This document shows, piece after piece, positions 1,627 to 21,469 of a stretch of 64,000 bases of DNA. The DNA is from Schmidtea polychroa (taxonomy: Eukaryota). Under the pieces are notes generated by a model that was given only the letters and a program-made list of their open reading frames with translations, did not search any database and was not told the origin of the DNA. Position 1 is the stretch's first letter. Each line of letters opens with the position of its first letter. A program made the translations under genes and the position numbers. Where the stretch lies: the NCBI GenBank assembly GCA_044892525.1, contig CM097885.1, positions 157,108,001 through 157,172,000 on the forward strand, read 5' to 3'.

Positions 1627-2221
1627 TTAGAAAATCTACAAACATAAATTAGAATATTAATATACTAAATTATGATTGAATAACCTAATAAGTATAACAA
1701 AAGCAGAAATTATTACACAAATATTCAATTTAAAATAATATTGATAATCATGACAACGTTTAAAATTTTTCCAATTTAATTAGTTGATAACTAAATTTTC
1801 GTTTCATTAAAAGCAAATTTATGTTTAAACAAAAATGTGAAATTTATTTTATTTTCATATCAAATTACATATGAAAATTTGTTTTTCAATCAACACGAAT
1901 TTTCAGCATTTCCGTTTTCAATTATTAATTAGCTTAAATAAAAGGAAATAATTATTTTATTTTTGAAAGTAATTTTTTGCATGCTAAATTATTTGAAAAA
2001 AAAAATAAAAAGAATAAGATTTGGAAATTTTATGATGGAAATGTCGTGTTTTTATGAAAATGGTTTGAGCTGATAATCTATTGTCCTAAACCGGATTATA
2101 ATTTGAATTATTACTACTGCTGCATTGGTTAGGTAATCAACATAACACAAATTTGCCAAACATAAGGACAAAACTTCAAATCTAATACTAAAATAAATCA
2201 AGGTAAAATCGAAACAGAACT

Positions 2222-2690
2222 TCAAAGTATCCTAAAAAACAAAGATACTATACAAACACGAAACAAAACCACACGAAACTCTGTTAGTTTTTCTTTAGTC
2301 ATTTCAGTCCTGAAATCATTGAACCAATTTTTAAAAGAATTCTCCATCTTTTCTATGGTTGCTACAAAGTTGCTTCGTATCAATTTTAGTTTGCATTGCT
2401 TCTCTATAATTTCTAATGTTTTAAAATGAATTAGGGTACCATTTTTATGTCTTTTGCAAATCACTTTAAGTGATTTATGAAAGAAAACACTGATTCTAGG
2501 AGAGTATTTACCATCTGCTTTCTCTTCTGCAATCTTATATTTAAATGATTTTAAAAAATGGCAATAGTAAAATAAAATTTATGCAAGGCGTTTTTAAACT
2601 GCTCTTTTGAGAACCAAGGAATCTTTTTAAATAAAATTAAAACCGAATACTGGGCTTTTAACTATTCCATATAAAACAAAATGACTGTGA
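2222..2690 (-). pseudogene. Decayed ORF of unknown family
   Basis: Protein-like minus-strand reading (KKIPWFSKEQFKNALHKF / fs / HFLKSFKYKIAEEKADGKYSPRISVFFHKSLKVICKRHK...SFKNWFNDFRTEM) with one frameshift in a T run. Confidence 0.25.
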
Positions 2691-2781
2691 TAAAGTACTT
2701 TTACCATAATATTTGGTTTGCTATTTAATTACTTAATCCTTGATTTTTACAACTTTTGACGAGAATGTTTGAGGATCTAGT

Positions 2782-3720
2782 TGTTGGGCTAAATTGTGAA
2801 GTGGAGGGAAACTGGGGAAAATCGGGAAACGAACCTCGGAAAAATAAACGAAATATAATAAAAAATAAATTACCATCAAACCTCAATAATAAATAAGGAA
2901 ACAATAAAATACCCATAAAAAGAAATAAGAATAAGTGATAAATAAATAAAGCCCTTAAGAATTAGAAATGGGACATAAGAGAAATGAGTTAAAGCACAAT
3001 AAATAAAGTAGAAATAGAATAAGCAAAAAGTAAGAGAAAATAAACGAGAAATTAAAGCAATAAATAAAAAATAAAAATATCTTTAAGTTTAATTAAAACA
3101 AAAATTGTATTATGATAAAGTAGCAGTGAACCCGCAGAAAAAATAGGAGAAAAATAAGAAAAATAGGAAAAATAAATAAAATAATAATAAGAAATAAGTT
3201 AAGTTATTAAAAGCTAATATATTATAATAAAAACATAAAATAATAATAAATATTAAAAATTAAAACCTAACTAAGTCCTGATTGGACGAAAAATAGTATA
3301 TAAGAAACGCGAAAAATCAGTAGAGTACCACTTTAACCAAAAACTCTACAGGTAAAATTTGTTAAACTTATCACTACCACTTTAACCAAAAACTCTACAG
3401 ACGACATTCAGGACCTACTCATCAAGATACTCTACAGAACGTGACTTACGAACCACTACGAAGAATCAATTTTAGAAAACGACCCAATCGATTTAGGAAG
3501 AAGTTCAGTAATCTTACTCAAAACAACCTGCGCGTTAATCGATTAGCTCCAGTTTCTTTTCCAAATCTCAAAGTATGTTAAGTATTTGTGGATTAGTTTT
3601 GTATGATTAAATTTAATGAATATCGATGATTGATTTTAATAAATTTTTTGTAAGTAATAAGAATAATTTCATTTAATAAATTTATTTAAAACTAAAAACT
3701 GCCTTTCTTCATGGTGCCGA
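2782..3720 (+). mobile_element. Possible LTR plus primer-binding site
   Basis: Starts TGTTGGG (2782), ends TTCTTCA (3711), and is followed at once by TGGTGCCGA (3712-3720), matching the first 9 nt of a tRNA-Phe-type PBS. A-rich body with an internal direct repeat TACCACTTTAACCAAAAACTCTACAG x2. No matching second LTR was found. Confidence 0.35.
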
Positions 3721-3735
3721 CGACGGTACCCTCTG

Positions 3736-4950
3736 GTGATTTCAAGGATGATGCCAAATGGAGAAGTAGCCACGAGGAGTTTTTATGACATGCATCTAGG
3801 AGATGTTGCGAATATATTGGAACCGGAGAAGGTGATGATGATAAGAGAGATATTTGCTAATGCTGAAAATGAATATATGATCGAAAATAAAAATGGAAAA
3901 GCATCATTCTTGGAACCCAGATGATATGGTCGCCGGGTATTTTGATTTATTTATTTTATTCATCATTTATTTCATCATTAATGTGATTCTAAGCGAATAT
4001 CTAATTTTTGAATGTAAAGGAGTTGATTGGTCCCTCATGACGGTGCAAGAATGGCGGCAGAAATGAATGCCTTATTGGGTGTGTCATGAGGGGTGATGAG
4101 ACTCGGTAGATGAAAAAATCCCAGTTGCGAAGAAACGATTTTTCCTTCACTCAGCGCGATCGTTAGGAGGAGAATCCTATCATTTCGTCCAGTTACATAG
4201 AGATTCCTGATTTTCGTATAGGAAGTTTATATTTCCAACTGAGGTTAAACCCAGATTAGATCGGTATAAGTATTTAAGTCTAACGAAACTTCACATAAAT
4301 CGAGGAAAATCTTCTAGGAGAATCAGCATGACGATCAGAATAACTGAGGAGGAATCTTGACAATCACCGTTTGCGATCAAACCCAACTGTTTTCCACAGC
4401 ATAATAAGTTCATGAGTTATTGCCTGAGTTTGATTGCCAGCACGTTAGCGACGAAATCCAGTATCGATGCACTTTTAGGTTAAATCAGTCACTTGCATAC
4501 TGCTGATAAGTTTTGGTTCTCTAACCAGAAAGTAAATAAAACAGTAGAAATTATCAGTTACTTACGGTCGAAATGAGGGAAATCGCTATCAGTGCCAGTG
4601 ACCCGATTTAGACAGCTTGATAAGGTTCCCGATAATTAATGAGGGCGGTTGTCGTAATCTGCGAGCGACTTATCTTTTTCCAGCGTCGAGTAGATACCGA
4701 TTTGTTTTTCCTTGTGACTTAAGTCCGAACACAGCAGCTGTCCGGGGAGGTTTCGATAATTTATCCGGCGAGTAGACGGTGAGTGAAGGCCGTTGGGCGA
4801 ATGAACTGAAAATCTTATCCAAAATCGACCTGACTTAGAAAAAGCTGAAACAAAAATTAATCTCATCCATTTAAAATCATGGATAATTTACATCGTTAGA
4901 ATTCATAAGTCCTCTAGATCAGCAAGTAAAATTCTGACGTGTCTGAAAAC
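3736..4950 (+). pseudogene. GC-richer decayed coding region downstream of the PBS-like site
   Basis: 62-aa ORF 3736-3924, then a stop-riddled but protein-like plus frame (...KPRLDRYKYLSLTKLHINRGKSSRR...). No gag, RT or integrase motif recognised. Confidence 0.2.
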
Positions 4951-5022
4951 TCTGACCGAGATGCTATAATTGTTTTCGTTAAGCACAATGACATGCATGC
5001 TTCACCACTTAGGCAGATTGTA

Positions 5023-6172
5023 CACCCGTTTCCACATGTTAAAAGTCTTTATAATACATGTTGGTGTGTTCATCTATCGATGACTCACCATTTATGAGAA
5101 TGTTTATTTCATTTTTTCATTCTCAATTCAATTTTATTTATGGTTTTAGAAGTAAGTTTTTTAAATTTAAGTATATTTTAAGGCTTGAATTTTGATTTCA
5201 TATAATTATGAGATCATTATTCAAGCTCTTAAATATTACTTGTAATCAGCATTTATAATATATTTATAATATATTGATAATATATTGATAATTAAATTTC
5301 AGGTGCTTTTTTAGGTATTTTATGATATGTTATGAATTTGGAATTATTTCAATAAAATGTAAGTTATATATATTTTTAACTAAAAAGAAATAAAATAATC
5401 ACCAAAAACATTTATTTTTTTAAGAAATAATGGTTCCAATCGATTTTTTGGAGATTCCCAGTAATCTTCCAAAATCTTTATAATTTTCTCCATTTTCATA
5501 TGGATTGATGAGACGGATTTTGTCATTTTCTGAAATTCTTTGAAAATATTATTTTTTTTTTAGTTATTAAAATTTACGATTTTCGAATTTTTTTCTTCAA
5601 TTCCAAAAATGTCGATGGAACTTGTTGAATATCTTCACACAAAGGCGTTTGACTAGAAATATCTGATATGCTGTAAAATATTTTAATTATTTGTAATTAA
5701 ATAAAAAAATTCTTACATTGTCAGATCTTCACCTTCGCAAAATGGAAATGTCTCCAAAGAAATATCTGAAAATCTAAAGAAATATTAACTTCAAAAATAT
5801 TTTATAAATAGATCTTTCGATGTTTTGTCGTCCATTTCTCAAAAACTCAAAGTTGAGTTGTCAGATTCAAAATCCAAATTTTTTTCAGCCATGAATTTTA
5901 ATAATTTTAAATTAATGATATGTTAACAGTATGTTAATGACTCTCTACTTTCGGAACAAAAAAAGCTATATTAAATTTGCGTGTATTTTATATTATGTGT
6001 CCTGTGTTTGTATGTAAAATTATTTTTCTGTCACTTTCTCAATTCCTATAATAAAACTTTCTACATTCGGAACATTAAATTTTTGCACACAGGTAAGTTT
6101 GTGTGTTGCTATAATATAATTTTATCGATTTTTTTTTAGATTATAGAAACTCTTATATTGTGGAAACGGGTG
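5023..6172 (-). mobile_element. 1.15-kb non-autonomous Tc1/mariner-type TIR element, copy 1
   Basis: Perfect 14-bp TIRs CACCCGTTTCCACA / TGTGGAAACGGGTG, flanked by TA (5021-22, 6173-74). Body nearly identical to 56139-57260. Confidence 0.9.
5420..5892 (-). pseudogene. Inactivated copy of the 4-exon HTH gene
   Basis: Same exon structure as 56516-56991, but exon 1 has CGA>TGA and the intron-1 donor is GT>GA. Same terminal TCT-TAA stop. Confidence 0.8.
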
Positions 6173-6923
6173 TAGTGAAAAGGCTGACGTCACCATTACA
6201 TAACATTAGCAAGGAAATATTGAGGCTGCATAATTAAGCAGTTTGATTTCGTCATTAGCAGACAGCGAAACAACCAGGGGTGAGAAAGTACAACTTGATG
6301 ACAGATAGAGTAGGCATGCATCACAATGTGTTAGGCCATATTAGTAACATGAATAGATGACAACATTTCCACCCGACCGCTTACAACTCCGCGTCGCTAT
6401 GACAACTTTTTCCGCGAAAATTTAAATAAATTAAGTTCACAATTTCCGATTTGAAACAAACCAAATATGCTTTTCTGATCTAATTACAACTCTAATAGAC
6501 CCGTCTAACGTAAAAGGACTCCTACCACACGGCATTTCTTTTTTCTATAATACAACTCGTACATACTCTGGCAAAGTAAAAGCGTCATGAGAGAAACGTG
6601 ATTATTAAAGTATAATAACAATAATGAGAATTAATAGTGACCACCATGGTGAATAAATAATCGTAGAATAAATGTATAAGTCAAAGTTAGAATAAATGAA
6701 TTATTTTTGTGGAATTCCCGTTTTCCCCGCATAAAATTTTAAGGATTGTGTGAATTAATTTTGAATGTTTGAGGCCTGAATAAGTTAATGGATGGTCGTT
6801 AGTATGCAAAGGCGAACTATTTTGAGTTTATGGATGAGGGAGGTGACAAAACTCGCGTCATAAACGTGTGATTATCGATCGACAAAAGTTTGTAAGACAT
6901 GTGTAAACTTTTTTAATCTTTAG

Positions 6924-7685
6924 ATGACTACTATAACCAATACTGGAAAAACTCTTCGTCCCTGCTTCTCCTGCGCCGACAAAAACGCTGACATCGCGCA
7001 GCTTCAACTCTACATCGGGGCACTTAAAAGGAGAATAGATCTCTAGGAGGGTACGTGGTTCTCCCCGCCACAAATGAAGGAGGAGCGTAGTAAGATCCTG
7101 CGACTGGAGCATTGTCGCGATAGCCTCCTGGAGGAGAGCCGAAATCAACGATTAACGATAAAGGCCCAGTCCGAAGCCCTCCACAAGGTTTATACGGAGG
7201 CAGAATTGGCCAAGAGAGTGCGCGAGTTTCCTGTCATCGACGGAACAAATGCTTTTCCCTTCCACCATCTGTCATCTTCAGCCTCCACCACAACTTGTCA
7301 AGGGCACGGTCCACATCTACCGCCCATCCCAGCCCCAGTGCTGTCTGGATACCTGCCCATGAAAGGTGGCCCATCTGACCCAATTCTGGCCCCGATTCTC
7401 GTGGCTCCTACCGTCAGTACGGTTGAAGAAGAAAATCCGCCACCCCGAAAACGAAAACATCCAACTCGGGCCGAGAAGAATAGAAAACGCAGAGATGCGA
7501 TAAAGGCGCTCGAGGCATCATTATCTGCAGCGCAGTCAAAACTGACCGAAGTAGCATCTACCCATTCGATCCCCTCGAAGGAAATTTTTCACATTGTCCC
7601 GGCCAACGGCATTAAATTTGTCTCGGATTGTCGATTGCCGGTCGACATCGATGAGATAATTGTCGATGGGGAAGATTTCGCCTAG
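6924..7685 (+). CDS. EGTWFSP-family coiled-coil/basic protein, copy A (253 codons, one in-frame TAG at 7044-7046)
   Basis: ATG 6924 is in frame with track ORF 7074-7685: MTTITNTGKTLRPCFSCADKNADIAQLQLYIGALKRRIDL*EGTWFSPPQMKEERSKILRL... Followed by a Pro-rich linker and basic PRKRKHPTRAEKNRKRRDAIKALE. Alignable to 14065-14550. Confidence 0.6.
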
Positions 7686-8071
7686 AAACAATCCAAGCCG
7701 ATCTAGATTTTCTCTTCGAGTTGTGATTCAGTTTGTAAACGTCGGTGACGCTGAATGTTCAAATTGATTAAACGTTGTTGAACTTATCCTTGATAGTGCT
7801 GTAACTACTTTGTGTTTTTCGATGTTAATATATTTTTCTGTTCGATTTTGTCTTGTGAAGCTTCAGTATGATTGATCTTAGAAATCAGGTTAAACGAAAT
7901 GATACTGTGAGATGAGTGAAATCTGGAAGAAGGTCGTTCCCTTGGACCAGGATCGAACCGTGATTGATGTATGAATGGGGGTAAGTCCTTCTAAGGCACC
8001 ATGGAACCTGAACCGCGAGAGGGTTATCAGTAGTCCTAAGGTAGGGGCTCACCTGTTAGCCAACTCCAACC

Positions 8072-8115
8072 CGTGTGGGCAGTACCAACGTGGAACATCG
8101 CCACGGGCTCACGCG
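8072..8115 (+). other. Conserved two-stem structured motif, copy A
   Basis: P1 CGTGTGGGC (8072-80) pairs with GCTCACGCG (8107-15; 2 G-U). Loop AGTACCAA (8081-88). P2 CGTGG/CCACG (8089-93/8101-05). Single G 8106. Same architecture at 14829-14869. Confidence 0.65.
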
Positions 8116-8236
8116 TGGGAATATTCGGATGATCATTTGGTGTATGCATGGGAAGTGTCTGAGCTGAACCATGAGGTCTGACATGTTGATGGTTATGCGT
8201 GTATGGGTTTCTTCTCCCTCATATGCCAACATAGTG

Positions 8237-9046
8237 CAACGGTTCTTAAACGTAGGTCGCGACCCACTTTTGTGTCGTGGAGCATTTTTTCTTGGGTCGC
8301 GGAGCATTTTGACAAATTGAGGCAAATTTAATATTCTTTGAAAATTTTTTTACATTTCAAGCGAACTTTAGTTTAAAATTTGCTTGATAAGAAAATTCTT
8401 ATGACTATTAACAAAAAATAGCTTTTTAGTGATCATTCAGAAGAAAGTTTAAAAATTAAATTTGTTTATTCTTAAGAGTATTGTTTAAAATATTCAATTC
8501 AAAAAATTAATACAGAAATTTACATAATTTAAAAAACTGTATTATAACTTTCTATTTAAAAAAATTATTAAAATTGAAAATTTATATTCCTCATTATTAA
8601 AAAGCATGAATATAAAGAAAAATATTTGGATTTGGGATTTACATATATAATTGTAAAAGGCGAATATAGGCCTCAATGTGTTTTATGTGGCACCATTTTA
8701 AGTGCCGAATCAATGAAACCAAATAAATTTCGAATGCATTTTACGACAATGCACAAAAATTTTTAATTTGACGAAAAAGATCAGAATTTCTTTAAATCAC
8801 AAGAAAATTTAATAAAAAGGCAACGTTTAGATGGGCCAGGAAATTCAAGTTTTTTTAAATATTACTAAACAGGCATCATTAGCTTCATATCATGTCTCAT
8901 GGCTGATAGCGAGGCAGAAGAAAGCTCATAACATTGCAGAAGCATTAATTTTTTTGAGTACTTTAATTATTTAAAAATTTTTTTGGGTCGTTTGGAGAAA
9001 TATTTTAGGATTTTGGGTCGTGACCAAAACTCCTTAAGAACCGCTG
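8237..9046 (+). mobile_element. Buster/Charlie-type hAT internal-deletion derivative
   Basis: TIRs CAACGGTTCTTAA / TTAAGAACCGCTG. TSD ACATAGTG / ATCTAGTG (6/8, central TA). Frameshifted N-terminal transposase: GFTYIIVKGEYRPQCVLCGTILSAESMKPNK...H...KQASLASYHVSWLIARQKKAHNIAEALI. Confidence 0.88.
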
Positions 9047-11169
9047 ATCTAGTGCTTCTAGATGTATAAAATATCATAAAATGGGAAACAAAACCTTTAC
9101 TTTTACTGTTAATGATTGGCGCTCAATCAGTCAAAACAAAAACTAATTTAATGATGTCTGTTATGTGTTATCTGATGGTTTTATTTTATTTATTTACCCT
9201 ATTTATAGTTAGGTTTTAGAAGTAAATATACTATATTATGTTGATTACTATTTTCTTTTGTCAATTTATGCTAGGAAGATTTGTTGAACCCGACAGCGTC
9301 ACATGTGTTGGGCTAGAACTGATTTCTAGACCCAAACTTCTAATTGTGACTGAAATGTGTAGGTACATAACATGCAAAAAAGCAAAAAGTATAGTTAAAT
9401 ATTAAACATACACCAAATAAACAATGGTAATTAAAGGAAGAAACAACAAAAAATAAACACAGAAATTAAATAAAATTATACCAAAAGCAAGACGTTTTGC
9501 AAAATCGAACTCAAAAATAACCAAATAAACATAGAGTTACAAAAAAACAGACTCGAATAACTTAAAAGACGGTAAAAACAGTAAAAATTCCAGAAAAACC
9601 CAGAACATTCCATAAAAATGGCGATGACCATCACAAAAGCCATCTAGAACAATAAAAGTTAGAGAAAATAAATAAATTAGTACTAAAAATAAAAAAATCT
9701 TAAAAAGAAATTCATAAAACATCAGTTAAAATAAAAATAAAATTAAAATTAACATGGAATGTTCTGGAACCGTTCCAAATCCATCATGGACGTCAAATTA
9801 ACGAAAAATAATTAAAAAATAAAAATTTAAAAATAAAAACAAAAATTATGGCACAAAATTGCCATTAAAAATATCAAAATCGCAAAATAGAAAATTCTGG
9901 AATAAAAAGAATTCGAGTTTGTTTTAATGCATCAACACATACACGTGTACTTGCACACACAAAAATAGGTACATATACTGACACGTTTCGGTCACAATTA
10001 AATCCATTTTATGCCAAATTTTTGTCAACAACAAATCGATAGTGAGTATTAATGTTCGATTGTATTTTTATCTTATGATAGTAATTATACGTAATTTTGA
10101 TTAGAAAATTAATTATGTTTTAGCCAAGTCGTTTTTTGAATTTTCTTTTGGGGGTGTACGAATGATCAGCGGCGTACTGGTATTCCTGCGTCGCTGTTCA
10201 GTCCTGCATCCAAATTAACTTAAATTCTCATAGGACAACATGCAGACATGCATTATTGATATTATATTGATATTATATTATATGGTTTTTTTGTTCGGGT
10301 CCTTCGGAGGTTGAACCACTTCATGGTCCTACCATGGAGTTAAGTCGAAGAAACCCTCCGCCTGACTCTTCTTATTTATTAAAGGTCAGCCGTAAATGGT
10401 TGACTTACTATACAACATTAAGGTTTGTCCTAGTGGTCCCAGTGGGGCTGCGAAAGCAATAACTCTTACCGACCTTTTACGTAATACACAATTAAAATCA
10501 ACATTTAAAATCATGGACAACAACTCTACACTAAGGTCATAATTTGAGTAGAACTCATACCCAAACTTACACAATTCTGCAATCACATTAATGTAGCTGG
10601 TTGATCAGTAATAACAATTTTAGTTATGCTTAGACATATGCCGAATTAGGTTTTGTAATAGAAGCTTATGGTAATCGAAGTAATAGAAATGATAAAGATA
10701 TTCGGCCTACGTCTAAGTAGAACTTAATCTAGATAGGTCTTTGAATTAATTATAAGGCTAACAAATTCAATGTAAATGTAGATATTATAAATCTAACAGA
10801 GTAAATTACGAATCCAAGTGCCCATCTTAGAATATTTATAAATGTATAATCACTTAATTATAAAAAGTTTCGATTAATCATAAAAATATAAGTTATAAAT
10901 AATTACGGGATTTTAGATACAAATTATACTGATCCTGAAAATATAAATTAGTAGTGGAGAAATTTTGATGATAAATTATAGACGAGGGATAGTAATAGAT
11001 AAATTTTAGTATAAAAAGTCAATTAACTTGGAACTAGTTATATATAGGTTATAGATGCGTTAGAACTCTGAAATTATAACCCATAAATAGTACCAAGAAA
11101 TCTGTAAGAAATTTGGAAACAATGTTGATCATAAAAAGGAATTCATAAAGAGGTATATAAAGTCGACTA

Positions 11170-11440
11170 TAAAATTATAAATCATAAAATATAAAATTAT
11201 AAATTATAAAATATAAAATTATAAATTGTAGAATATAGAATTATAAATTATAAAATATAAAATTATAAATTATAAAACATAAATGTATAAATGGTAAAAT
11301 ATAAAATTATAAATTGCAAAATATAAATTATAAAATATAAATTTCTAAATTGTAAAATAAAAAATTATGAATTGTAAAACGTGAAATTATAAATTATAAA
11401 ATATAAATTTGTAAGTGGTAAAGTGCAAAATTATAAGTTG
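11170..11440. repeat. Degenerate AT-rich minisatellite
   Basis: Tandem ATAAAATT/ATAAATT-based units. Confidence 0.75.
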
Positions 11441-11616
11441 TAATTCCTTATATATGAATGCTCACAAAAATAAGTTATAAATGCTTATATAATAGTTTAC
11501 AGCTAGGTACAACTATAAATTATAAAAACTATGACTGTTAATATTGTTGAAATTATTATTATTACTATTATCATTAGTATTATTACTATCAATATTATTA
11601 TTGTTATTATTATTAT

Positions 11617-12389
11617 CAGTGCTCGAAGTGAGGCGGGATAGCCGGAATATTATCCCGGCATTGATTATGTAGGCGGAATTGCATCCCGGCACTTCATTTC
11701 ATATAATCTATAGGTTTATCCCGGTACTTATTTCATTTTATAGGCACACAAATACTGCAATTAAGGTCNNNNNNNNNNNNNNNNNNNNNNNNNNNNNNNN
11801 NNNNNNNNNNNNNNNNNNNNNNNNNNNNNNNNNNNNNNNNNNNNNNNNNNNNNNNNNNNNNNNNNNNNNNNNNNNNNNNNNNNNNNNNNNNNNNNNNNNN
11901 NNNNNNNNNNNNNNNNNNNNNNNNNNNNNNNNNNNNNNNNNNNNNNNNNNNNNNNNNNNNNNNNNNNNNNNNNNNNNNNNNNNNTCAATTAAGAATTTCC
12001 CAAGCAGCAGTAATGGATAGGTAGGTATATTCTCTTATTTATTTTAGTTAAACCAGCAAGTTGTTTGTTCAGTTATTTATACTGCGACCCCCTCTATATA
12101 TAATGTGTCTATATATAAAATTTGTTGGACACCCCCCAAAGTTTTGCAATACACCCAACTGAAAATTTCTGCATAAAAGCCTGGAATCCCGGGTGCCACA
12201 GCATGCCTATCCCGGCACATATNNNNNNNNNNNNNNNNNNNNNNNNNNNNNNNNNNNNNNNNNNNNNNNNNNNNNNNNNNNNNNNNNNNNNNNNNNNNNN
12301 NNNNNNNNNNNNNNNNNNNNNNNNNNNNNNNNNNNNNNNNNNNNNNNNNNNNNNNNNNNNNNNNNNNNNNNNNNNNNNNNNNNNNNNNN
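11617..12389. mobile_element. Second copy of the CAGTGCTCGAAGTG hAT MITE, broken by two N gaps
   Basis: 11617-11768 and 12118-12222 nearly identical to 544-915. Gaps at 11769-11984 and 12223-12389 hide the right TIR. About 115 bp of extra sequence at 12001-12117. Confidence 0.8.
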
Positions 12390-13475
12390 TAATTATTATT
12401 ATCAATAACTCAGATATTCGCGTATATACCATTAGTCATGAATGTATTATTAATTATATATGTTATGGTGATATCTATCGGTCGTATATATAAATGCTAT
12501 ATAAATTGTATATTATTATTATTCTCAGTAATTATTAATTATAAAAAATCAATATCCCGATCTAATATCGATTTAGGGATTTCCCCAAGAAATTAAATTT
12601 AGAATTAACCCTGTGATCCAATAGGAAGGATCAAAATTCTCGAAAGGTATTTTTAGTAACACCCCCCCTGGGAGAATGTCACCATCATTCGGGTCGCCTG
12701 GGGATATGGGTGAGGGGGTATGATCCACTACACAAGCTAATACCAAATGGATAATCAAACATACAATTGTTATTAAATTAACATAGACAAGAAACAAAAG
12801 AATTATTATAATTTTTATTCGAGCAATAAATTACCATGCACGATCTTTATGAACAAAAAATCATGATTCCTGACCAAGAATCGTAGGACGAGTTCCAGAA
12901 GCTGAACCTCGATATCTCCAGCTGGAAAGAATAATCATCAATTGTCCCTAAATTGAAATACATGATAAATGCATAAATTACCTTAATATATAAAAGATGC
13001 TGATCCCACTTATAACGAGTACAACCAGAGGAAGAGTAAGTGAGCAAGAGACTGAGCTCTTCACTAGTACCCATCGCCTGATGTACCCGCGGCTAGTGGA
13101 ATTATTCATAATTATTGAATTATCTGAAAAATTTAATATATATAAATTCAAATTACCAACTAGTGGTAATAAATTTTTTAGGATTAAAATAATAATTTAA
13201 AACAAAAGTAATTTTTGTGAAATTGTCGGTCGAGGCATAGATTTTCTAGCCTTAATGCTTAACTTTGATAAAATTCTTCTTTAATTTAACTAATTAAAAA
13301 GTATATCAATAAATTGAATCGAAAATTTTAGGTTAGAAACATTTATTTTAATTATAATAAATTTGGTAGTTAGAGTACTATTTGTTTTAAACAAGAAAAT
13401 TTTGTATATTTTATCGTAACGTCAATTTATAAGTCACATTGGTTATGCACGGGTCTTAATATTTATACTACAGGC

Positions 13476-13825
13476 ATGTCCCAATCAGATGATTTCAGCG
13501 ACGGAGAAGCCGATCGGCAAATGATCACCCGGCTCCGTACTCTTACATTTGGTACCGTATCCACGATTGGAATCGTGGATTGGACCTTGATAACTTCGGC
13601 CCAGTTATCCGAAGTGGCCATGAACCTGATGCCCCGGCGTGGGTGAAAACGGAGCCGGAGAACAATGCGCTACAAGAGGCCAGTGATGTAGAAGCCGCTC
13701 AGGTCCGGCTTAAGAAAATCGAGTTACAAATCCGGGCAAAGAGAGAGGGAGTGTCCCTGGAGGAACTTGAAGAAGCCGAGGCACCCCCACGAAAGAGAGG
13801 GAGGCCCCGCAAGCGCCAAACGTGA
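13476..13825 (+). CDS. Small AT-hook protein (probably one frameshift near the 5' end, or a spliced 5' end)
   Basis: Frame open 13493-13825: ...YSYIWYRIHDWNRGLDLDNF...WVKTEPE...RLKKIELQIRAKREG...PPRKRGRPRKRQT*. Contains AT-hook core KRGRPRK and psi-K-x-E motif VKTE. ATG 13476 (MSQSDDFSDGEADRQ) joins this frame if one A is restored in CAAATG. Confidence 0.55.
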
Positions 13826-14064
13826 TCGTTAGATGACAATTAACTTAACTTAGTCATTTCAATCATCGATTGCTTCCTAACTAAATCATAGGAATCATCT
13901 GGTGTTTGTTATTTAAATAAAGTATTTCTTGTAGTTTTGTAATTCAAGTAGGTGATTGAGCGAGTACAATAGTGTCGTAAGCGGTAAAGCACTAATGTTA
14001 ATTAATAATTTTATTACTTGTTTGTTCTAATTCTGTTTGGTATGAATGAAATTAATAACCTTTT

Positions 14065-14550
14065 ATGCTTTTAGTGTATAAATTAATGGAAAACCTGCGA
14101 CAAGATCGGGAGCAGGCCCAAAAACAAGCTGACGAACTCCGTGTCCGAGTTGATAAACTGAAAAGGAAGTGCCGGGAGTTTGAGGGGACCTGGTTTAGTC
14201 CCAAGGCAATGAAAAAGAAGACAGCCCAGATTCTCCAGCTACAGACACAAGCCGCCCAAGACCAAATGAAGATCCGCGCCCTAAAATTGCAGGTGCGCGC
14301 GCTCGAAACCGAGCGAAACGAGCAGTTTGTACAGGAAGCTGTGGCAAGGCAAATCCGGCCGCTGACCGTTGAACTGGCAGCGATATATCCTCCAGCCGCT
14401 GAAAGTAAACCTAAGCGAAAGCGGCTAGCACGGAACATCAGAGAGAAATTAAAGAAGGCCAGATTGGCCGAATACGAACGACAAGTCAATTCGTCAACAT
14501 TACAAGCGTCTACGACGGGGCTAACCAGCTCTACCAACAAGCCGATTTGA
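14065..14550 (+). CDS. EGTWFSP-family coiled-coil/basic protein, copy B (161 aa)
   Basis: Uninterrupted GC-rich ORF: ...LRQDREQAQKQADELRVRVDKLKRKCREFEGTWFSPKAMKKKTAQILQL...KPKRKRLARNIREKLKKARL. Alignable to 6924-7685. Confidence 0.65.
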   Translation: MLLVYKLMENLRQDREQAQKQADELRVRVDKLKRKCREFEGTWFSPKAMKKKTAQILQLQTQAAQDQMKIRALKLQVRALETERNEQFVQEAVARQIRPLTVELAAIYPPAAESKPKRKRLARNIREKLKKARLAEYERQVNSSTLQASTTGLTSSTNKPI

Positions 14551-14828
14551 ACTTTTATGAATTTCGTTTTGTATATTTTTGTAGTGTGTTTTGTATATTT
14601 TTGTAGTATTAAAATAATACATATTTTTGTAGTATTAAAATAATACATGATATATTTTATTATATGATTGCCTGAGGAATGAGAGTTTGTGTGTAAGGTT
14701 GGGAAAACAATTTCGATAAGGGACCTGAGGAAATCGGACATAAACCTTCTAACGGTAGTCCGTGAACCCATAGAGTACTCGACAATTATAGTGCCTCGAT
14801 GCGCTCACTTTTTGCGAGTACTCAACCC

Positions 14829-14869
14829 CTTGGTACAGTACCAACGTTGATTACTCAACGGGTACCAAG
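14829..14869 (+). other. Conserved two-stem structured motif, copy B
   Basis: P1 CTTGGTAC (14829-36) / GTACCAAG (14862-69). Loop AGTACCAA (14837-44). P2 CGTTGA/TCAACG (14845-50/14855-60). Single G 14861. Confidence 0.65.
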
Positions 14870-15980
14870 CGGAAAACAATATTGTATCCTGGGTTACGCT
14901 GGTAACAGCATAAAATCGTAATTATTCAACCACCAGTAACCCACCACATGTAAAAATATGTGGCGGGACAGTTGGGGTGCCTGTTCAAATAATAATAAAG
15001 TTAAAATATAAAATTAAACAAATTTAACAAACGATTTACAATTCTAACTTTTATTGAACAAAGAAACAAACAACCTGAGTTAGCTTCCTCGGTAGTACTT
15101 TGATTGATGAGAACGACAGGGTCTGATAAAATAAATAATTCAGAATGAATAGTTCGTTGATTGATTTGAAATATCACAGGAATGGAAGGAAATTCAATAA
15201 GAATGTATGATGTATTGATAAATTTTGAAGTACTCAAGTAATGTTCGCAGATTAAATTATTTCCTTTTGATTTTTAATCTTTCTATTTCTTGGATTTATT
15301 TTTTTTCGATTTTTTTATTTTCTATAGCGATAATTTACTATAGTAATTTTTTTTGGGCTATAGTAAATTTTACTATAGTAAATTATCGCTATATAGTCTT
15401 TTTAAATATTTCGTTATTTCGACCCTTCGTGCCAGAACCCAATGATAACGAAAGCCTAATTGGGATTTTACGATCGTTGATAAAAACCATAAAAATATAA
15501 CCATTTTGCTATCATTGATAAAAACCATAAAAATATAATAATTTACTACAATGTCTATCTCATTTTTGGTTAGAAATTATATAATTGCTTTTTAAGAGGT
15601 TGCAAAGCTATTAACTCTTCATGAATATATGTAAGTATTACATACTGATCTAGGAGGCTAACTTTTCAATATCCTCAATGTCAAAAACTAGGGAAATTCC
15701 CATTGCTATTTCATGTCTTTAGTTTGTTGATTTGCAAGATCTGCAGCCATTTTAGTCATTCTGTCATAAACTGTTTTTGTAGATATTGGGGTGTTCAAAG
15801 TGTTTATATATATTCTACCATGGCCAAAAATCATTTTTTGATATATTTACCTTATGCAAATATTTAATTTATAATATTTTTCTTTCTTATATAGAAATAA
15901 TAATAGATAGAAAAAAAGATAATAAGAAACATACGTAAATATAAATTTATGGGAGAATATTCTCTTAATAATATAGCATT

Positions 15981-16066
15981 TAAAAAATTGACTATGAATC
16001 GTAAAGATATCCCTGTTTTTTTTTGATATTCACGAATTTTCAACACGGCCTTTTTCAAGTGATTTT
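15981..16066 (-). repeat. Dispersed ~85-bp repeat resembling a Penelope-like terminal repeat
   Basis: Reverse complement reads CACTTGAAAAAGGCCGTGTTGAAAATTCGTGAATATC...GATTCATAGTCAA. Related copies at 24686-24743 and 31274-31446. Confidence 0.55.
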
Positions 16067-17969
16067 AATAATATAGGTTTATTTATTTTAAAGTACAAAA
16101 TAAATAATTAACATTCTTTTTTTGTTTTGCACATAAAGCTCGGTGGGTCGGTATATATTTACTATTAGTTTTAATATTCAAGTGTCTATATTTCTTTATA
16201 TTCTGAAAATCATAATGTCTCAGGGACTTAATTTTCATTTTATTCAATTTTGGTTTATCATCAAGGTACCAAAATGCAAATTAAATTTGGAAAAATGCTC
16301 TTGTATATAATAATTAAAATAATCCCGGGTTGCCGATCCATAGTATATAGCATTTGTCATAGATTATGGTGACAGACTGGTGATGGGAATAATATCCTTG
16401 AAATCTATTTCATCTGTTTGGCCTTTTAGTGTTTTTATTTTATATTACTTTGTATTATGTATATAGGAAAAAATTATAAACTTATTTGTTTTAATAAATA
16501 ATACAAGAAGACAAAAATGATTATATTTATAAAAATTATAGAAATTCCAAATATTCATAAATTATTATCAAATTTACAATATTAGTTTTTTTTAAATGTT
16601 GTAAAGTAAAGTTCGACATGTTGAAGTTGTTAAAGGTCTATTATAAAATTTAATTCTACAAAATTGATCCATTTCCTAATATTGTTGCCCATATTTAGAT
16701 TATTATTCACTTTTAATTTCGATTAGGGATTTTTTTCAAATATTCCATTTAAACAACTTACAATCGACGAAAAACAAGACAAATGTGACAAACTGTTAAA
16801 ACAATAATATCAAATTCTATTTTAATAGATTGGATCAAATGAAGTGTTGATCTGAATCATGAACATGCAGCTGTGATAATTATTGCAATCATGTGGCTAA
16901 TTTGCAAACATTTCCCAGCGGCTGCCGCTCTCGTCAACATTCCGAGCCATGTTACTAAAAGTTTTTCTTAATTAAAAAAATTGTTAGATTTGTAATTTTA
17001 TAATTTTTCTTGCGTAATTCAGATTTATTGACGTTTTTGTTTTAATATCACGTGGAAAATTAATTTTCCATTTCCTCAATCTATTAATATTATTATTTAA
17101 TTGGAATTATTATTCCGAATTCCCATTATGGTTTCAGGAAAACCTTATTTCTTCAAAATTTGAGCGACCTTCCCTCTAGGACAAGAGGATCTCTGCGTGG
17201 AAAGCCAAGATGCTCAGTATAGGCCGTATAACCAAATGTGCAAGTGCAACATTTTTACACTTCTGCACAATTGGTGACTTCGTAGTTGATGTTATATTTT
17301 AATTTCATTGCTGTTTTTATTTTAGAAAATTCAAATTAAATTCAAATAGTAAACATTTTGTTTGGTTTGGTGATTTTTGGCGTGCGCACTAGCTTGTGAT
17401 AACTCTGCGGGGCTTTCAAAAAAAATGCGCTTCTGAGCACACACGCAGTTTAGAGAGAACGTTGTTGATGAAGTTTGAAAATTATAGAAAAATTTAGAAA
17501 AATTATTTTAATTCATAAAAATAATAAAAAATATAAAAAATTTAATAGTAATCTTTTTTGAGGTTTTTAGCAGGTAACAAATGAAAAGATAAATACGAAT
17601 ACAATAATATAATTGCGACATAGGTATACTAATTAATTAACAAAATAATCACTTTATATGATAAACAAAATCCTTAAGTATGCATTTTCGCATTTTTTTT
17701 AATTGGGATAAAATAATTTTAGTTTATTCTTTAGTTTTCTGAAACATTTCTTATTTTTAGAAGTTAGCTACTATAAAAGAAAAGGGAAATTTTTAAAAAT
17801 CGAATTAGTGATAGTAGTAGATATGTTATCCTCGCTCAACCAAGATCACCCATAGTTAAATCCAACTCAGGCTTAAAATTCTTCAAATCAGACATAAAAT
17901 TATTATTATACAAGTTTTTAATTTTCTACCAAAATGTGACAACTCACTTATTTAAACAAATTCAGATAT

Positions 17970-19410
17970 CTAACTCTCTTCTTCATAAGAATTTTTCCAC
18001 TTCTTCAGCCACTCGATTTTTCTTTCCTTCGTTCCTTCTTGTGAATTTAGTTCGACTCGATGAGGTGATACAAATTTGATGATTTTATATGGGCCATCGT
18101 ATTGCATACCATCCTTGTGTCTGTTCTGCGCTTCTTTACGTACGAGTACCTCCTCCACCACCTCGAAAACACGAGTGCCCCTCTTTTCTTATCCATAGCT
18201 CTCATAGTGTCTGCGGCTTTACTCGAGCTAAATCGCGTCTTCGATTCTTTCGCTTCTTGATATCTCGGCTTGTTTCAGGTTAGAGTGTAGGTTAACACTC
18301 CGTCCATAAATTATCTCAAATGGTGATAAACCTGTAGCACTTTGTCGACTGCTATTTATAGTGTACTCATTTCTGCGTAGAAGTTCGTGCCAGTTTCTCT
18401 CTTTACATCCACCTGCCAATGTTGCTGTAATAAGATCTCTTATCGTTCGTATGGCTCTTTCGGCTAAACCATTTGATTAGTGCTGGTAAGGTGAGCTAAA
18501 TTACTGTTTGATTCCAAATTTCTGTAGCTTCTGTCTTAGGAAATTCCCTTCGAAATTGTGGCCTCTATCTGTTAAAATGCTCTTCGGTTTTCCGAATCGA
18601 TAGATCCAACTATTAGGTATCGTTTTGAAAATTGTCCCTTTGTCTTGCTTTGTGATTGCAGTTAAAGAAACCAGTCTGCTAAACCGGTCCACCATTACTA
18701 TCATATATTTTTTATGACGTTTATTTTCATGTAAGCCACATCAATAACAATCTGTTCTAAGAATTCAGAGTTATATCTAGTAATAAATGTTTCCTTGGTT
18801 CTTGTCCGATCGATCTTTCTCTTAGCACAGGTCTCGCAACATCGTAAACAGAGTTGGATTATTTCTTTCATTTTCGGTCTATAAAATATCTTTTCCATAT
18901 AATTAAATAATTTCTTAACTCCGATGTTCTTCATGTAGGCCTGCAGATATTTCTGGGATTAACATTAAAATATTTTTGTTCTTTTCTACTGTTATTAATC
19001 CTCCATCAATTCGTGTATTTTTTACGTTAAAAGGAAAACAATTTTTTTTTACCCGTGTTTATCCATTTTCCAATATCTCGAAACCAAATGTCCTGTTGTT
19101 GTTATTCCCATACTTTTTCCATAACTTCTGTTCTTTTGATTATATATATATATATATAATCTTTGATTTTTCTTCCATAGCTTCTTCATGTCTTGTTTGA
19201 AACTGGTTGGAAATCATCCATCTGCATTCGAGTGTTCTTCACCTTTCCGATATTTTAGTTCAAAATCATATTCCGACAGGTTAGCTATCCATGTTTGATA
19301 CTTCTAGCTTATTGGTGTTTTTGTAGTGTTTAAGAAAACCGATGCTTTGTGGTCGGTGCGAATTATTAATTTCTTCCCGTAAAAAATATTCTTTAAAATG
19401 CTTTATTAGA
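17970..19410 (-). mobile_element. Ty3/gypsy pol remnant (RNase H end plus integrase), frameshifted
   Basis: IIRTDH...WIANLSEYDFELKYRKGEEHSNAD; zinc-binding CETCAKRK; IVIDVAYM; VMVDRFSR; FGKPKSILTDRGHNF; ATGLSPFEIIYGR; GPYKII. Stop at 17970. Confidence 0.9.
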
Positions 19411-19645
19411 TGTTTGATTTCTTGAATTAATAACATTCATAATATTTCAAAACAAAATAAAACACAAAATCTCTCTTATTTAAACAATCTCTGTTTTTAG
19501 CTTTGAGGATATTTTCGCACGCACGACTTAATAATTGAATAGGCAATATTCGTACACAAGCATTCAATAAATATTTTATATTTTAATTTTTAATCATTCT
19601 TAAATATATTTAATTTACTATATTAATTTATAATTTTATTATCTA

Positions 19646-21353
19646 CTGTAAAATCCCGAGTATAAGTTGCAGCGCGTATTAGCTGCAGATGACATTTTTA
19701 TAAAAATGTATTTTTTAGTCCTATAAACCGCAGCACATAGTAGCTGCACCATTTGCGTTGAAAACACATGATTTTTAAATCAGCAACCTATCATTAAAAA
19801 ACAAATTTCACCGTGACAATAACCATTTTGTTTTAATCGTTTACATTGTTTACATTGTTTACATTGTTTATTGCACTGTTTTGAATCCTTGATTAAAATG
19901 GATAACGATTCTGAACAAAAACAAAAGAAACAACGAAGATCTTTTAGTTCAGCAAAGAAAAAAAGAAGTTATTGAATAAAGCTCGTCTGTTCGGAAACAT
20001 ACGGGGGTTGCAAGACGATATGATATTAATGAAACTGTTATTCGACGATGGATCGCCCAAGAGTCTGTTATCAAAGCAATGAATCCAAATCGAAGATCTT
20101 TGCGTGGTGGTAACGCTATATATCCGGAATTGGAAACGAAATTACACGAATGGATCCTAATTCAACGTGAACGAGAACTTCAAGTGTCGGTTGTTCGAAT
20201 TCGTTTACAGGCACAAGTAATTGCCAAAGAGATGAAAATTGAAGGATTTGTCGCGAGCTCTCAATGGACTGATAATTTCATGAAACGCAAGAATATTTGT
20301 GTTCGACGGCCTACCACGAAGCAACAATTACCGAAAGATTGGGAATTTCAGATGGCCAAGTTTAGAAGCACCATCGCAGATTTAAAGAAGGATTTGCCCG
20401 ATAATCAAATTGTTAATTTTGATGAAGTGTCCATTCAATGTGACATGCCTTTAGGGTACACAATTGAGACTAAAGGTGCCAAAGAGGTCCGAATTAAAAC
20501 TACAGGACATGAGAAAAAACGATTTACCGTCAATCTATGTGTTCTCAAGGATGGTACTAAACTTCCGCCATTTGTTATTTTAGGCACAAAGAAACATCCA
20601 AAGACTTGCATTCCTGAATCAAAGCTTGTTATTGCAGCTAATGGATCTGGGTGGATGAATCATGAAACTCTTGAGATATGGCTCAAGAAAGTATGGAAAA
20701 GTCGAATTACATTTCCTCCAAAGACACCATGGAACCAGGATCCAAAAGTACCATCATTGCTTTTATTGAAATATGCATCGCTCACATCTTGACAGTACTA
20801 CACTTGATAAAATTAAGAAGGAATCCAAAGTAGCTTTCATATCTGCCGGATTTACATCAAAGGTGCAGCCATTAGATCTTACTGTTAACCGTTCGTTCAA
20901 GTCAAAATTGCGCAAGAAGTGGGAGGATTGGATCATTAAAGAATATGAAAACATCAAACATACTAAGTCCGGAAATATGAAAGCAGCTTACTGGAATACT
21001 ATTTTCGAATGGATTGTTTCTTCTTGGGAAGATTTTAACCTTTCCACCATTTTGAATGGTTTTTATGTTGCATTCGGTGAAGACGACGATGTTCTTGAAA
21101 TTGAAGAAAATGAAATCAATGTGAACGAGTCTGATCCAAACATTGTAGAATTACTAGAAAATTTCACTTTTATTGACAATGAAAAGTGTGATGGTTTTGA
21201 GGAGTGTGATGTTGAAAATTGAAATAAATAATCTTATCTTCGATTTGAATTGTTTTTTAGTTGTATAAGCTGCACATCATATTAGCTGCAATTCAGAATT
21301 GTTGCCTTAATGTACGTATTAGCTTATGTTAGCTTATACTCGGGATTTTACAG
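19646..21353 (+). mobile_element. pogo/Tigger-family DNA transposon, full length, frameshifted transposase (19898-21222)
   Basis: TIRs CTGTAAAATCCCGAGTATAAG / CTTATACTCGGGATTTTACAG with TA both sides. CENP-B-type HTHs (VARRYDINETVIRRW; YPELETKLHEWI) and DDE_1 motifs NFDE and VQPLDLTVNRSFK. Frameshifts near 19970-20005 and about 20770. Confidence 0.93.
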
Positions 21354-21469
21354 TACTTTTATTATATTATTTAAATCTATTTAAAACTGGAAATCAGATA
21401 GTAATTCTATTTAATTACTTTCACATCCCCCTTTTTAAAGGCTTTAACTAATCTATGTTTCTTACAAGC

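What the first reader, a model, noticed from the sequence alone, without database searches (positions are those of the whole stretch)
8030..14869. Covarying structured motif (P1-AGUACCAA-P2-G-P1') downstream of both EGTWFSP ORFs
Seen: 387 nt after the copy-A stop (8072-8115) and 279 nt after the copy-B stop (14829-14869), in the same orientation, lies the same fold. The outer stems are almost entirely different in sequence yet both pair (CGTGTGGGC/GCTCACGCG vs CTTGGTAC/GTACCAAG). The inner hairpins also differ yet pair (CGTGG/CCACG vs CGTTGA/TCAACG). The 8-nt loop AGTACCAA and the opposing single G are invariant. Both copies are preceded by AACCC, an upstream hairpin and GTAGTCC (8030-36, 14755-61), and followed by AATATT. 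The cores do not match hammerhead, twister, pistol or HDV-like ribozymes as I know them. Inference: a cis-acting RNA (or ssDNA) element, such as a replication/packaging signal, protein-binding site or new ribozyme, paired with the orphan protein. This is the best candidate for an undescribed system here.
Basis: partly seen in the sequence, partly recalled or inferred. Interest (0 to 1): 0.87.

Follow-up and report, generated by a model that had tools for sequence, protein, structure and literature searches.

The report
Conserved two-hairpin RNA in flatworm 3' UTRs
Two very diverged copies of a small flatworm-specific coiled-coil gene each carry, a few hundred bases after the stop codon, the same ~100-nt two-hairpin RNA fold with an invariant 8-nt internal loop. 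It matches no known RNA family, but with only two copies available its function remains inferred.

Summary
Both sites (A 8017-8118, B 14773-14872, + strand) fold into the same architecture: an irregular upstream hairpin, a 2-3 nt linker, then CC-P1-AGUACCAA-P2-G-P1'-N-GG. Nine base pairs differ on both sides yet still pair, five of them in P1. The fold exists only as sense-strand RNA, because copy A relies on G.U pairs. A covariance model built from either copy alone finds the other as the best hit in the window (E about 5e-5 and 3.5e-6). The rest of the 3' regions is not alignable above chance. Rfam gives nothing, including no ribozyme family. Pattern scans of viral and metagenome contigs give only chance hits without the stems. 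The upstream ORF is a helical-hairpin plus basic-tail protein with only two distant relatives. One relative is joined to the N-terminal half of a parvin exactly at a shared splice-acceptor-like site, so the ORF looks like a self-contained terminal-exon or trans-spliced cassette found at unrelated loci. Copy A's ORF has one in-frame stop. My best reading is a selected cis-acting 3'-UTR RNA that displays an invariant loop for a trans-acting factor, possibly its own protein. A new ribozyme or a mobile protein-RNA module is not excluded. No further copies could be reached with these tools.

The parts
6924..7685 (+). Copy A ORF (EGTWFSP-type module). It reads in one frame from an ATG directly after a ctttag acceptor-like site and is broken by one in-frame stop.
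   Evidence: family HMM 1.9e-46 for the part after the stop
8017..8066 (+). Copy A domain 1 (H1), an irregular hairpin: outer stem, 1-nt 5' bulge, 3-bp CAG/CUG stem, then an inner 6-bp hairpin with a 6-nt loop followed by unpaired CAC.
8070..8118 (+). Copy A domain 2: CC + P1 (8072-8080 / 8107-8115, 9 bp including 2 G.U), invariant loop AGUACCAA (8081-8088), P2 hairpin (8089-8105), opposing G (8106), 1-nt bulge, GG (8117-8118).
14065..14550 (+). Copy B ORF, intact, 161 codons from the first ATG. The acceptor-like ttttag ends at 14074, and the next in-frame ATG is at 14086.
14773..14823 (+). Copy B domain 1 (H1): 9-bp outer stem, 1-nt 5' bulge, 3-bp CAA/UUG stem, then an inner 5-bp hairpin with a 6-nt loop followed by unpaired CAC.
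14827..14872 (+). Copy B domain 2: CC + P1 (14829-14836 / 14862-14869, 8 bp), invariant loop AGUACCAA (14837-14844), P2 hairpin (14845-14860), opposing G (14861), 1-nt bulge, GG (14871-14872).
8137..8143 (+). Copy A downstream word complementary to the invariant loop (7 bp including 2 G.U). It is a candidate pseudoknot partner and weak evidence only.
14900..14904 (+). Copy B downstream word complementary to the invariant loop (5 bp), at a similar distance as in A. It is a candidate pseudoknot partner and weak evidence only.

Best explanation
This is a conserved, roughly 100-nt, sense-strand RNA structure in the 3' untranslated region of a small flatworm-restricted gene family.

Two adjacent irregular hairpins act as a scaffold. 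Their helices are free to change sequence as long as they pair. Their terminal loops are free to vary. Their internal unpaired residues are fixed: the 8-nt AGUACCAA strand opposite a single G in domain 2, CAC next to the inner hairpin of domain 1, and the AAC(C) linker.

That pattern is what is expected of a recognition platform, where a trans-acting factor reads the displayed internal loop and thereby controls the fate of the mRNA in cis (localisation, translation, stability or 3'-end handling).

The most economical candidate factor is the protein encoded just upstream. It is a helical hairpin with a lysine/arginine-rich helix, which would give autogenous binding.

Shown: the shared fold, the compensatory changes, the strand and RNA specificity, the position after both ORFs, and the absence from known families.
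Inferred: that the region is transcribed as part of the ORF's mRNA, that a protein binds the loop, and which protein does so.
For: - Both copies give the same minimum-free-energy fold, on the + strand only. Copy A as - strand RNA, or as DNA on either strand, loses it.
- Nine pairs change on both sides with 96.7% pairing, against at most 1 such pair and 25-48% pairing in slid controls.
- Reciprocal single-copy covariance models recover the other copy at E 5e-5 and 3.5e-6 as the top non-self hit in 128 kb searched.
- The best local alignment of the two 3' regions is exactly this element. The 220-330 nt between stop and element align no better than shuffles, and blastn finds no other similarity between the loci.
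- A coding explanation fails. The frame that reads through the shared 12-mer stops inside P2 in copy B.
- ORF homology is real but remote. The family HMM finds only these two copies in the window, and both carry the element.
- The protein model is helix 2-38, a turn at the conserved GTWF, helix 43-104, then a basic helix 118-147.
Against: - There are only two copies. Covariation statistics on two sequences are weak in principle, and the alignment used for counting was fitted to the structure.
- There is no transcript evidence, so 'UTR' is inferred from position and from a downstream AATAAA in B.
- Copy A's ORF carries one in-frame stop, so in A the element may be a relic rather than under current selection.
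- Nothing shows protein binding. The basic tail could equally be a nuclear localisation signal.
- Relatives' 3' regions were unreachable, so co-occurrence beyond 2 of 2 is unknown.
Confidence: 0.5

Rival explanations
1. The ORF plus its structured 3' RNA is a dispersed, possibly mobile or virus-derived cassette. It would consist of a splice-acceptor-bearing ORF and an RNA signal used for copying or packaging of its own transcript.
For: - The module is G+C-rich (50-56%) in a roughly 29% G+C genome, like the transposon ORFs of the window.
- It occurs at unrelated loci. There are two sites here without parvin exons, and one relative is joined to the N-terminal half of a parvin exactly at the acceptor-like site.
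- One copy is decayed, with one stop.
- The protein, a coiled-coil plus a basic tail, is of the general type of nucleic-acid chaperones.
Against: - No terminal inverted or direct repeats, target duplications or poly(A) tails flank either unit.
- No polymerase, integrase or capsid gene is nearby. Pfam, PHROG-independent searches, PDB sequence and fold searches give no viral or transposon relative for the protein.
- There are only 2 copies in 64 kb and 2 relatives among 1.84 billion representatives.
- The copies are far too diverged for a recently active family.
- No structural match was found in viral or metagenome contigs.
Confidence: 0.2
2. The element is a small self-cleaving ribozyme of an undescribed class. 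Two helical domains each carry a conserved internal loop, and these could dock to form an active site, processing the 3' end of the transcript.
For: - The conservation pattern (variable helices and terminal loops, invariant internal-loop residues in two adjacent domains) is the pattern seen in small ribozymes.
- The position downstream of an ORF is compatible with 3'-end processing.
Against: - No match to any Rfam ribozyme model even at E up to 10 on the 150-nt cores.
- Roughly 15 invariant unpaired residues in two copies cannot distinguish catalysis from protein binding.
- No tandem or circular arrangement typical of ribozyme-bearing repeats is present.
- There is no data on RNA ends.
Confidence: 0.08
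3. It is an independent small non-coding RNA gene, or a short structured repeat of SINE or MITE type, that happens to lie downstream of both ORFs.
For: - The element is compact (about 100 nt) and self-contained.
- The distances from the stop differ (387 vs 279 nt, or 332 vs 223 nt to domain 1).
Against: - No internal or upstream polymerase III features were verified and no T-run terminator follows either copy.
- ARAGORN and Rfam find nothing.
- A repeat family would be expected elsewhere in 64 kb, but both models find only these two sites, each after a family ORF.
Confidence: 0.1
4. It is a DNA-level signal, such as a cruciform or single-strand hairpin at an origin or transposon end, or a palindromic protein-binding site.
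For: Copy B is perfectly Watson-Crick and folds on both strands. It contains a 15-nt palindrome spanning P1 and the loop.
Against: - Copy A needs G.U pairs. With DNA parameters it does not form the shared fold on either strand (z about 0), and the palindrome is absent from A.
- No element termini were found.
Confidence: 0.04
5. It is a chance resemblance of two unrelated hairpins.
For: The sequence-only local alignment score is only 2.6 sd above shuffles, and some shuffles reach it.
Against: - Reciprocal covariance-model E-values are 5e-5 and 3.5e-6.
- The identical 12-mer sits in identical structural register.
- A second homologous hairpin lies at identical spacing.
- Both sites lie in the same orientation after the only two family ORFs in the window.
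Confidence: 0.02

Closest known systems
Protein-bound structured elements of eukaryotic mRNA untranslated regions (iron-responsive element, SECIS element, histone mRNA stem-loop)
   Same: It is a short hairpin in an untranslated region. Its helices covary while a few unpaired residues (an internal loop or bulge) are invariant and are read by a specific protein. It acts in cis on the mRNA that carries it.
   Different: No Rfam model of these or any other cis-regulatory family matches. The loop geometry (8 nt opposite 1 nt) and the second, adjacent conserved hairpin are not features of those families as I know them. The binding protein is unknown, and the element is restricted to a tiny flatworm gene family.
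Autogenous operator or packaging hairpins of RNA phages and retroelements, where a coat or Gag-type protein binds a hairpin on its own RNA
   Same: A small basic, oligomerising protein is encoded next to a conserved hairpin on the same transcript, and the hairpin has fixed unpaired residues.
   Different: This is a functional analogy only. No homology of the protein to any coat, Gag, ORF1 or delta-antigen-type protein was found. There is no replicase or reverse transcriptase, no element boundaries, and no hits in viral contigs.
Small self-cleaving ribozymes built from two helical domains with conserved internal loops (hairpin-ribozyme type architecture)
   Same: Two adjacent helical domains each carry a conserved internal loop. 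The terminal loops and helices are variable.
   Different: The Rfam hairpin, hammerhead, twister, twister-sister, pistol, hatchet, HDV-like and related models give no match at E up to 10. Catalysis is untested, and the domain connectivity is a simple tandem of two hairpins.
Tetrahymena group I intron P5/J5-5a segment
   Same: It contains the same 9-10 nt string around AGUACCAA.
   Different: This is coincidence. In that intron the string is mostly helical, no group I model matches here, and nothing else of an intron is present.

Membership tests
Conserved structured RNA (generic criteria) | Same secondary structure predicted independently in each homologue | tested here: met
   The single-sequence MFE folds of A and B are identical in architecture.
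Conserved structured RNA (generic criteria) | Compensatory base changes that keep the pairs | tested here: met
   9 of 33 pairs change on both sides and 96.7% of cells pair. Slid controls give at most 1 such pair. With only 2 sequences, no R-scape-type significance is possible.
Conserved structured RNA (generic criteria) | Strand and RNA specificity (G.U pairs) | tested here: met
   Copy A folds at -42.3 kcal/mol on the + strand and -29 kcal/mol on the - strand with a different structure. The DNA-parameter fold is lost.
Known self-cleaving ribozymes (hammerhead, hairpin, twister, twister-sister, pistol, hatchet, HDV-like, hovlinc; Rfam 15) | Match to the family covariance model | tested here: not met
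   There was no ribozyme hit at gathering score in the window, nor at E up to 10 on 150-700 nt around each copy.
Known self-cleaving ribozymes | Site-specific self-cleavage | not testable with these tools
   There is no RNA-end or biochemical data.
Rfam cis-regulatory UTR elements (SECIS, IRE, histone 3' stem-loop and others) | Match to the family covariance model | tested here: not met
microRNA precursor | Match to a miRNA family model, or a hairpin without a large asymmetric loop | tested here: not met
   The only hit is mir-7360 at 13.6 bits against a gathering score of 47. An 8-nt/1-nt internal loop is atypical.
Transposon or ssDNA-element terminus (TIR, LTR, Helitron-type 3' hairpin, rolling-circle origin) | Terminal repeats or element boundaries next to the hairpin, and a hairpin stable as DNA | tested here: not met
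   No terminal inverted or direct repeats were found around either unit. Copy A does not fold as DNA.
Delta-antigen-type protein with an adjacent ribozyme (viroid-like or delta-like agents) | Protein related to a delta antigen, an HDV-fold ribozyme, and a rod-like self-complementary unit | tested here: not met
   The PDB sequence search returned no such protein, there is no HDV-like Rfam hit, and there is no long-range self-complementarity. I had the hepatitis delta antigen in mind, and no named hit came back.
tRNA or tRNA-derived SINE | Cloverleaf detected | tested here: not met
   ARAGORN found 0 genes in the window.
EGTWFSP-type protein module (provisional family: A, B, P0001, P0002) | Conserved C-R-x-x-E-x-[TS]-W-F-x-P-x-x-M turn between two long helices, plus a basic R/K-rich segment | tested here: met
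   HMMER 3e-21 (P0001) and 9e-4 (P0002), tblastn 1e-27 and 7e-8, the alignment and the AF2 model.
EGTWFSP-type protein module | The RNA element follows the ORF in every member | tested here: inconclusive
   2 of 2 in the window. The contigs of P0001 and P0003 end 21 nt after the stop. P0002 has no DNA on record.

The most novel reading that the evidence does not exclude
The ORF and its two-hairpin RNA form a self-contained protein-RNA module of a kind not yet described. One form would be a new class of self-cleaving or otherwise catalytic RNA. The other would be a dispersing cassette that enters host transcripts through its own splice acceptor, with its protein recognising the invariant loop on its own RNA.
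Probability: 0.1. Interest if true: 0.85.

Novelty: new variant of a known kind. Interest (0 to 1): 0.5.

Why it matters
Very few structured cis-acting RNA elements are known from flatworms, and none is in Rfam for this motif. This is a clean case: helices covary around an invariant internal loop, next to a lineage-restricted protein of unknown function. It offers a concrete, testable handle on post-transcriptional control, or on a protein-RNA partnership, in planarians. If the element turned out to be catalytic or part of a mobile cassette it would be a new class. If it is an ordinary regulatory hairpin it is still a new RNA family worth a covariance-model census.

Tried and rejected
1. Known RNA families. 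I ran Rfam at gathering score on the window and at E up to 10 on four sub-regions. Nothing relevant came back.
2. More copies by DNA pattern. I scanned for AACCC-N7-CAGTACCAACG(T). There were 9 hits in viral contigs and 40 in metagenome contigs, none with P1/P2 pairing, so all are chance. I did not scan the bacterial/archaeal genome collection, which is irrelevant for a flatworm element.
3. More copies by protein. The word-indexed search with B, P0001 and the C-terminal part of P0002 found nothing new. The full HMMER search found only P0001 and P0002. Exact look-ups of window ORFs, including the antisense 239-codon ORF and the hAT ORF, show this genome is not in the contig collection.
4. Protein identity. 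Pfam, the PDB sequence search and AF2 plus Foldseek gave only generic helical-hairpin matches (E > 0.04).
5. tRNA or SINE idea. It was prompted by a B-box-like word near 7947, but ARAGORN found nothing.
6. Transposon boundaries. No terminal repeats were found.
7. Residual homology of the rest of the 3' UTR. It is not above shuffles, and the chain of shared 8-9-mers I first noticed there is chance.
8. Weak extra covariance-model hits (566-637, 11639-11710, 51036-51118) are unrelated hairpins.
9. A full-text search for the loop string found only siRNA sequences and the Tetrahymena P5 coincidence.
10. I tried by hand to splice the upstream G+C-rich ORF of locus B (13580-13825) to the main ORF. 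No in-frame GT donor fits, so I dropped the idea.

- I also recalled a stretch of a parvin. None was entered into a tool or used as evidence. All family tests rest on tool hits.
- An early script printed a translation in which the stop of copy A is visible.

Full report
**Context**

The window is AT-rich (about 29% G+C) and eukaryotic. It contains:
- two Rfam mir-753 precursors, a planarian microRNA family;
- an intact hAT transposase ORF, a pogo/Tc5-type transposase split over two ORFs, and an EGF-domain exon;
- four runs of N.

It is most likely planarian. The genome itself is not in the contig collection available here.

**Gaps first**

The two gaps inside the finding's span (11769-11984, 12223-12389) lie between the two copies, in AT-rich sequence whose edges are repeats also seen at 542-894.
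- Copy A (ORF 6924-7685, RNA element 8017-8118) lies wholly in the uninterrupted stretch 1-11768.
- Copy B (ORF 14065-14550, element 14773-14872) lies in 12390-24343.
- Nothing in the observation reads across a gap. Only the spacing, linkage and relative orientation of the two copies rest on the scaffold.
- The ORFs that the mechanical list shows at 11679-12493 run through N and are artefacts.

**The observation**

The distances from the stop codons (387 and 279 nt) and the quoted strings are correct.

Folded alone as RNA, both + strands give the same structure:
- two C-G pairs, then a one-base bulge on the 3' side;
- P1 of 9 bp in A, including two G.U pairs, and 8 bp in B;
- an 8-nt unpaired 5' strand AGUACCAA;
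- a P2 hairpin (5 bp with a 7-nt loop in A, 6 bp with a 4-nt loop in B);
- a single opposing G.

The 12-mer CAGTACCAACGT is the longest word the two loci share. It occurs only at these two places in the window. A descriptor scan of both strands (loop with up to 2 mismatches, P1 of at least 6 bp, P2 of at least 4 bp) returns only these two sites.

**The element is larger than described**

Immediately upstream, separated by 2-3 nt, each copy has a second irregular hairpin (A 8017-8066, B 14773-14823) with the same layout:
- an outer stem, then a one-base 5' bulge;
- a 3-bp stem (CAG/CUG in A, CAA/UUG in B);
- an internal loop, then an inner hairpin beginning AGU and ending GCU around a 6-nt loop, followed by unpaired CAC.

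A GCUCAC block lies exactly 21 nt before AACCC in both copies.

GTAGTCC is inside this hairpin in A but 18 nt upstream of it in B. AATATT occurs 178 times per strand in the window.

**Is it more than chance?**

- A covariance model made from copy B alone finds copy A as the best non-self hit in both strands of the window (26.5 bits, E about 5e-5). The next unrelated hits score 15 bits or less.
- The reciprocal model from A alone finds B at 35.7 bits (E about 3.5e-6), with the next hit at 16.9 bits. The weak extra hits are unrelated hairpins.
- On the model-fitted alignment, 96.7% of cells are standard pairs and 9 of 33 pairs differ on both sides: five in P1, one in P2 and three in domain 1. 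When the 3' partners are slid by 1-3 columns, only 25-48% pair and at most one such pair appears.
- Sequence alone is only marginal. The best local alignment of the two 3' regions is exactly this element, but it scores only 2.6 sd above shuffles.
- The 220-330 nt between stop codon and element align no better than shuffled sequence. blastn finds no other similarity between the loci.

So an island of structure is conserved in otherwise unalignable sequence. The caveat is that two sequences do not allow a proper covariation test.

**RNA or DNA, and which strand?**

- Copy A's + strand folds at -42.3 kcal/mol (z -2.1). Its - strand folds at -29 kcal/mol into something else (z +0.9).
- With DNA parameters neither strand of A forms the shared fold (z about 0).
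- Copy B is all Watson-Crick and uninformative.

The shared fold therefore exists only as sense-strand RNA, the strand of the ORF.

A coding explanation is excluded. The frame that reads through the shared 12-mer ends inside P2 in copy B, and the substitutions are compensatory rather than synonymous.

**What is upstream?**

- Copy B encodes an intact 161-codon ORF. Copy A has the homologous frame with one in-frame stop.
- The two share the turn motif and a basic segment but little else (tblastx 4e-7, blastp 1e-6).
- Pfam, the PDB sequence search and the word-indexed protein search give nothing.
- A full HMMER pass over 1.84 billion representatives finds just two relatives.
  - P0001 (157 aa, 3e-21) comes from two low-coverage metagenome contigs that end 21 nt after the stop.
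  - P0002 (416 aa, 9e-4) matches alpha-parvin over residues 107-259 (PDB 9uiu_A, 8.5e-22; Pfam CH). Its homology to B starts exactly where B's sequence follows a ttttag.
- All three genomic copies have such an acceptor-like site just before the homologous part, with an ATG within 0-25 nt after it. The P0001 contig also has a GTAAGT donor-like site about 118 nt upstream.
- The window has no parvin exons.

My inference is that the ORF is a self-contained terminal-exon or trans-spliced unit that occurs at unrelated loci. P0002 is either a real alternative last exon or a gene-model fusion with a nested gene. That planarians use spliced-leader trans-splicing is from my own knowledge, not from a tool.

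The AF2 model (pLDDT 77) is a long helical hairpin with the conserved GTWF at the turn, followed by a basic helix. Foldseek returns only generic helical hairpins at E > 0.04. A family HMM finds only A and B in the six-frame translation of the window, so ORF and RNA element co-occur 2 of 2.

**Comparison with what is known**

- Rfam 15 gives no match at gathering score, or at E up to 10 on the cores, for any ribozyme, cis-regulatory element, intron or small RNA. ARAGORN finds no tRNA.
- No terminal repeats bound either unit.
- Scans of viral and metagenome contigs with a 16-17-base pattern return 9 and 40 hits, none with the stems.
- The loop string occurs in the Tetrahymena group I P5 region, which I regard as coincidence.

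**How it most likely works**

The conservation pattern is helices that covary, terminal loops that vary, and fixed internal unpaired residues in two adjacent domains. That is the signature of a scaffold presenting a specific surface.

I commit to a cis-acting 3'-UTR element read by a trans-acting factor (confidence about 0.5). The upstream basic helical protein is the most economical, but unproven, partner.

A downstream word complementary to the loop lies at similar distance in both copies (A 8137-8143, B 14900-14904). This leaves room for a pseudoknot, but it is weak evidence.

Rival explanations and my confidence in each:

| Rival | Confidence |
|---|---|
| Dispersed or mobile protein-RNA cassette | 0.2 |
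| Independent small RNA or structured repeat | 0.1 |
| New self-cleaving ribozyme | 0.08 |
| DNA-level signal | 0.04 |
| Chance | 0.02 |

**Verdict**

It is a new RNA motif of a known general kind.

Interest is moderate (0.5). It is limited by n = 2 and by the absence of any transcript or functional data. The decisive evidence is a genome-wide covariance-model census plus transcript-end and structure-probing data.

- The script printed a translation in which the stop of copy A can be seen.

Noticed in passing
window 5021-6164 and 56137-57262: This is a ~1.14-kb element with 35-nt terminal inverted repeats, present twice at 94-97% identity. Each copy carries the Rfam mir-753 precursor hit (5174-5235, 56290-56351), so this planarian microRNA family sits inside a transposon-like repeat. 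The sequence flanking the second copy is contiguous at 41404-41763, which looks like an empty site.
   Followed up: partly
window 52167-53966 (+): An intact 599-codon hAT transposase ORF (BED zinc finger plus hAT dimerisation domain) lies in a 40-45% G+C island.
   Followed up: partly
window 20079-21222 (+): A pogo/Tc5-type transposase (HTH_Tnp_Tc5 plus DDE_1) is split over two overlapping ORFs in different frames, so it is probably a decayed copy.
   Followed up: partly
window 13476-13825 (+): A G+C-rich block (42-56%) lies 250 nt upstream of copy B's ORF. It holds an 81-codon ORF ending in an AT-hook-like basic motif that weakly resembles the basic segment of the family (tblastx E 0.076). 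I could not connect it to the main ORF by an in-frame splice, and it is not recognised by the family HMM.
   Followed up: partly
window 14052-14771 (-): A 239-codon antisense ORF covers the whole of copy B's ORF. It is probably a by-product of the codon composition of a coiled-coil gene, and it is not on record in the contig collection.
   Followed up: partly
window 11106-11640, 542-894 and 11615-12222: A 22-nt-period tandem array lies next to the first gap. The gap edges are 97-99% identical to 542-695 and 789-894, so the gaps sit in a repeated segment. I did not use this to infer the missing letters.
   Followed up: no
window 44920-45339 (+): An exon-like ORF with calcium-binding EGF domains is probably part of a host gene.
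   Followed up: no
window 14595-14646: A perfect 26-nt tandem duplication, plus a third partial copy upstream, lies in the AT-rich part of copy B's 3' region between the stop and the structured element.
   Followed up: no
L050 39-46 versus window 14766-14773: The word CCATAGAG lies just before the donor-like GTAAGT upstream of the P0001 ORF, and also at the start of domain 1 in copy B. This is probably chance. The covariance model finds no element in L050 or L051.
   Followed up: partly
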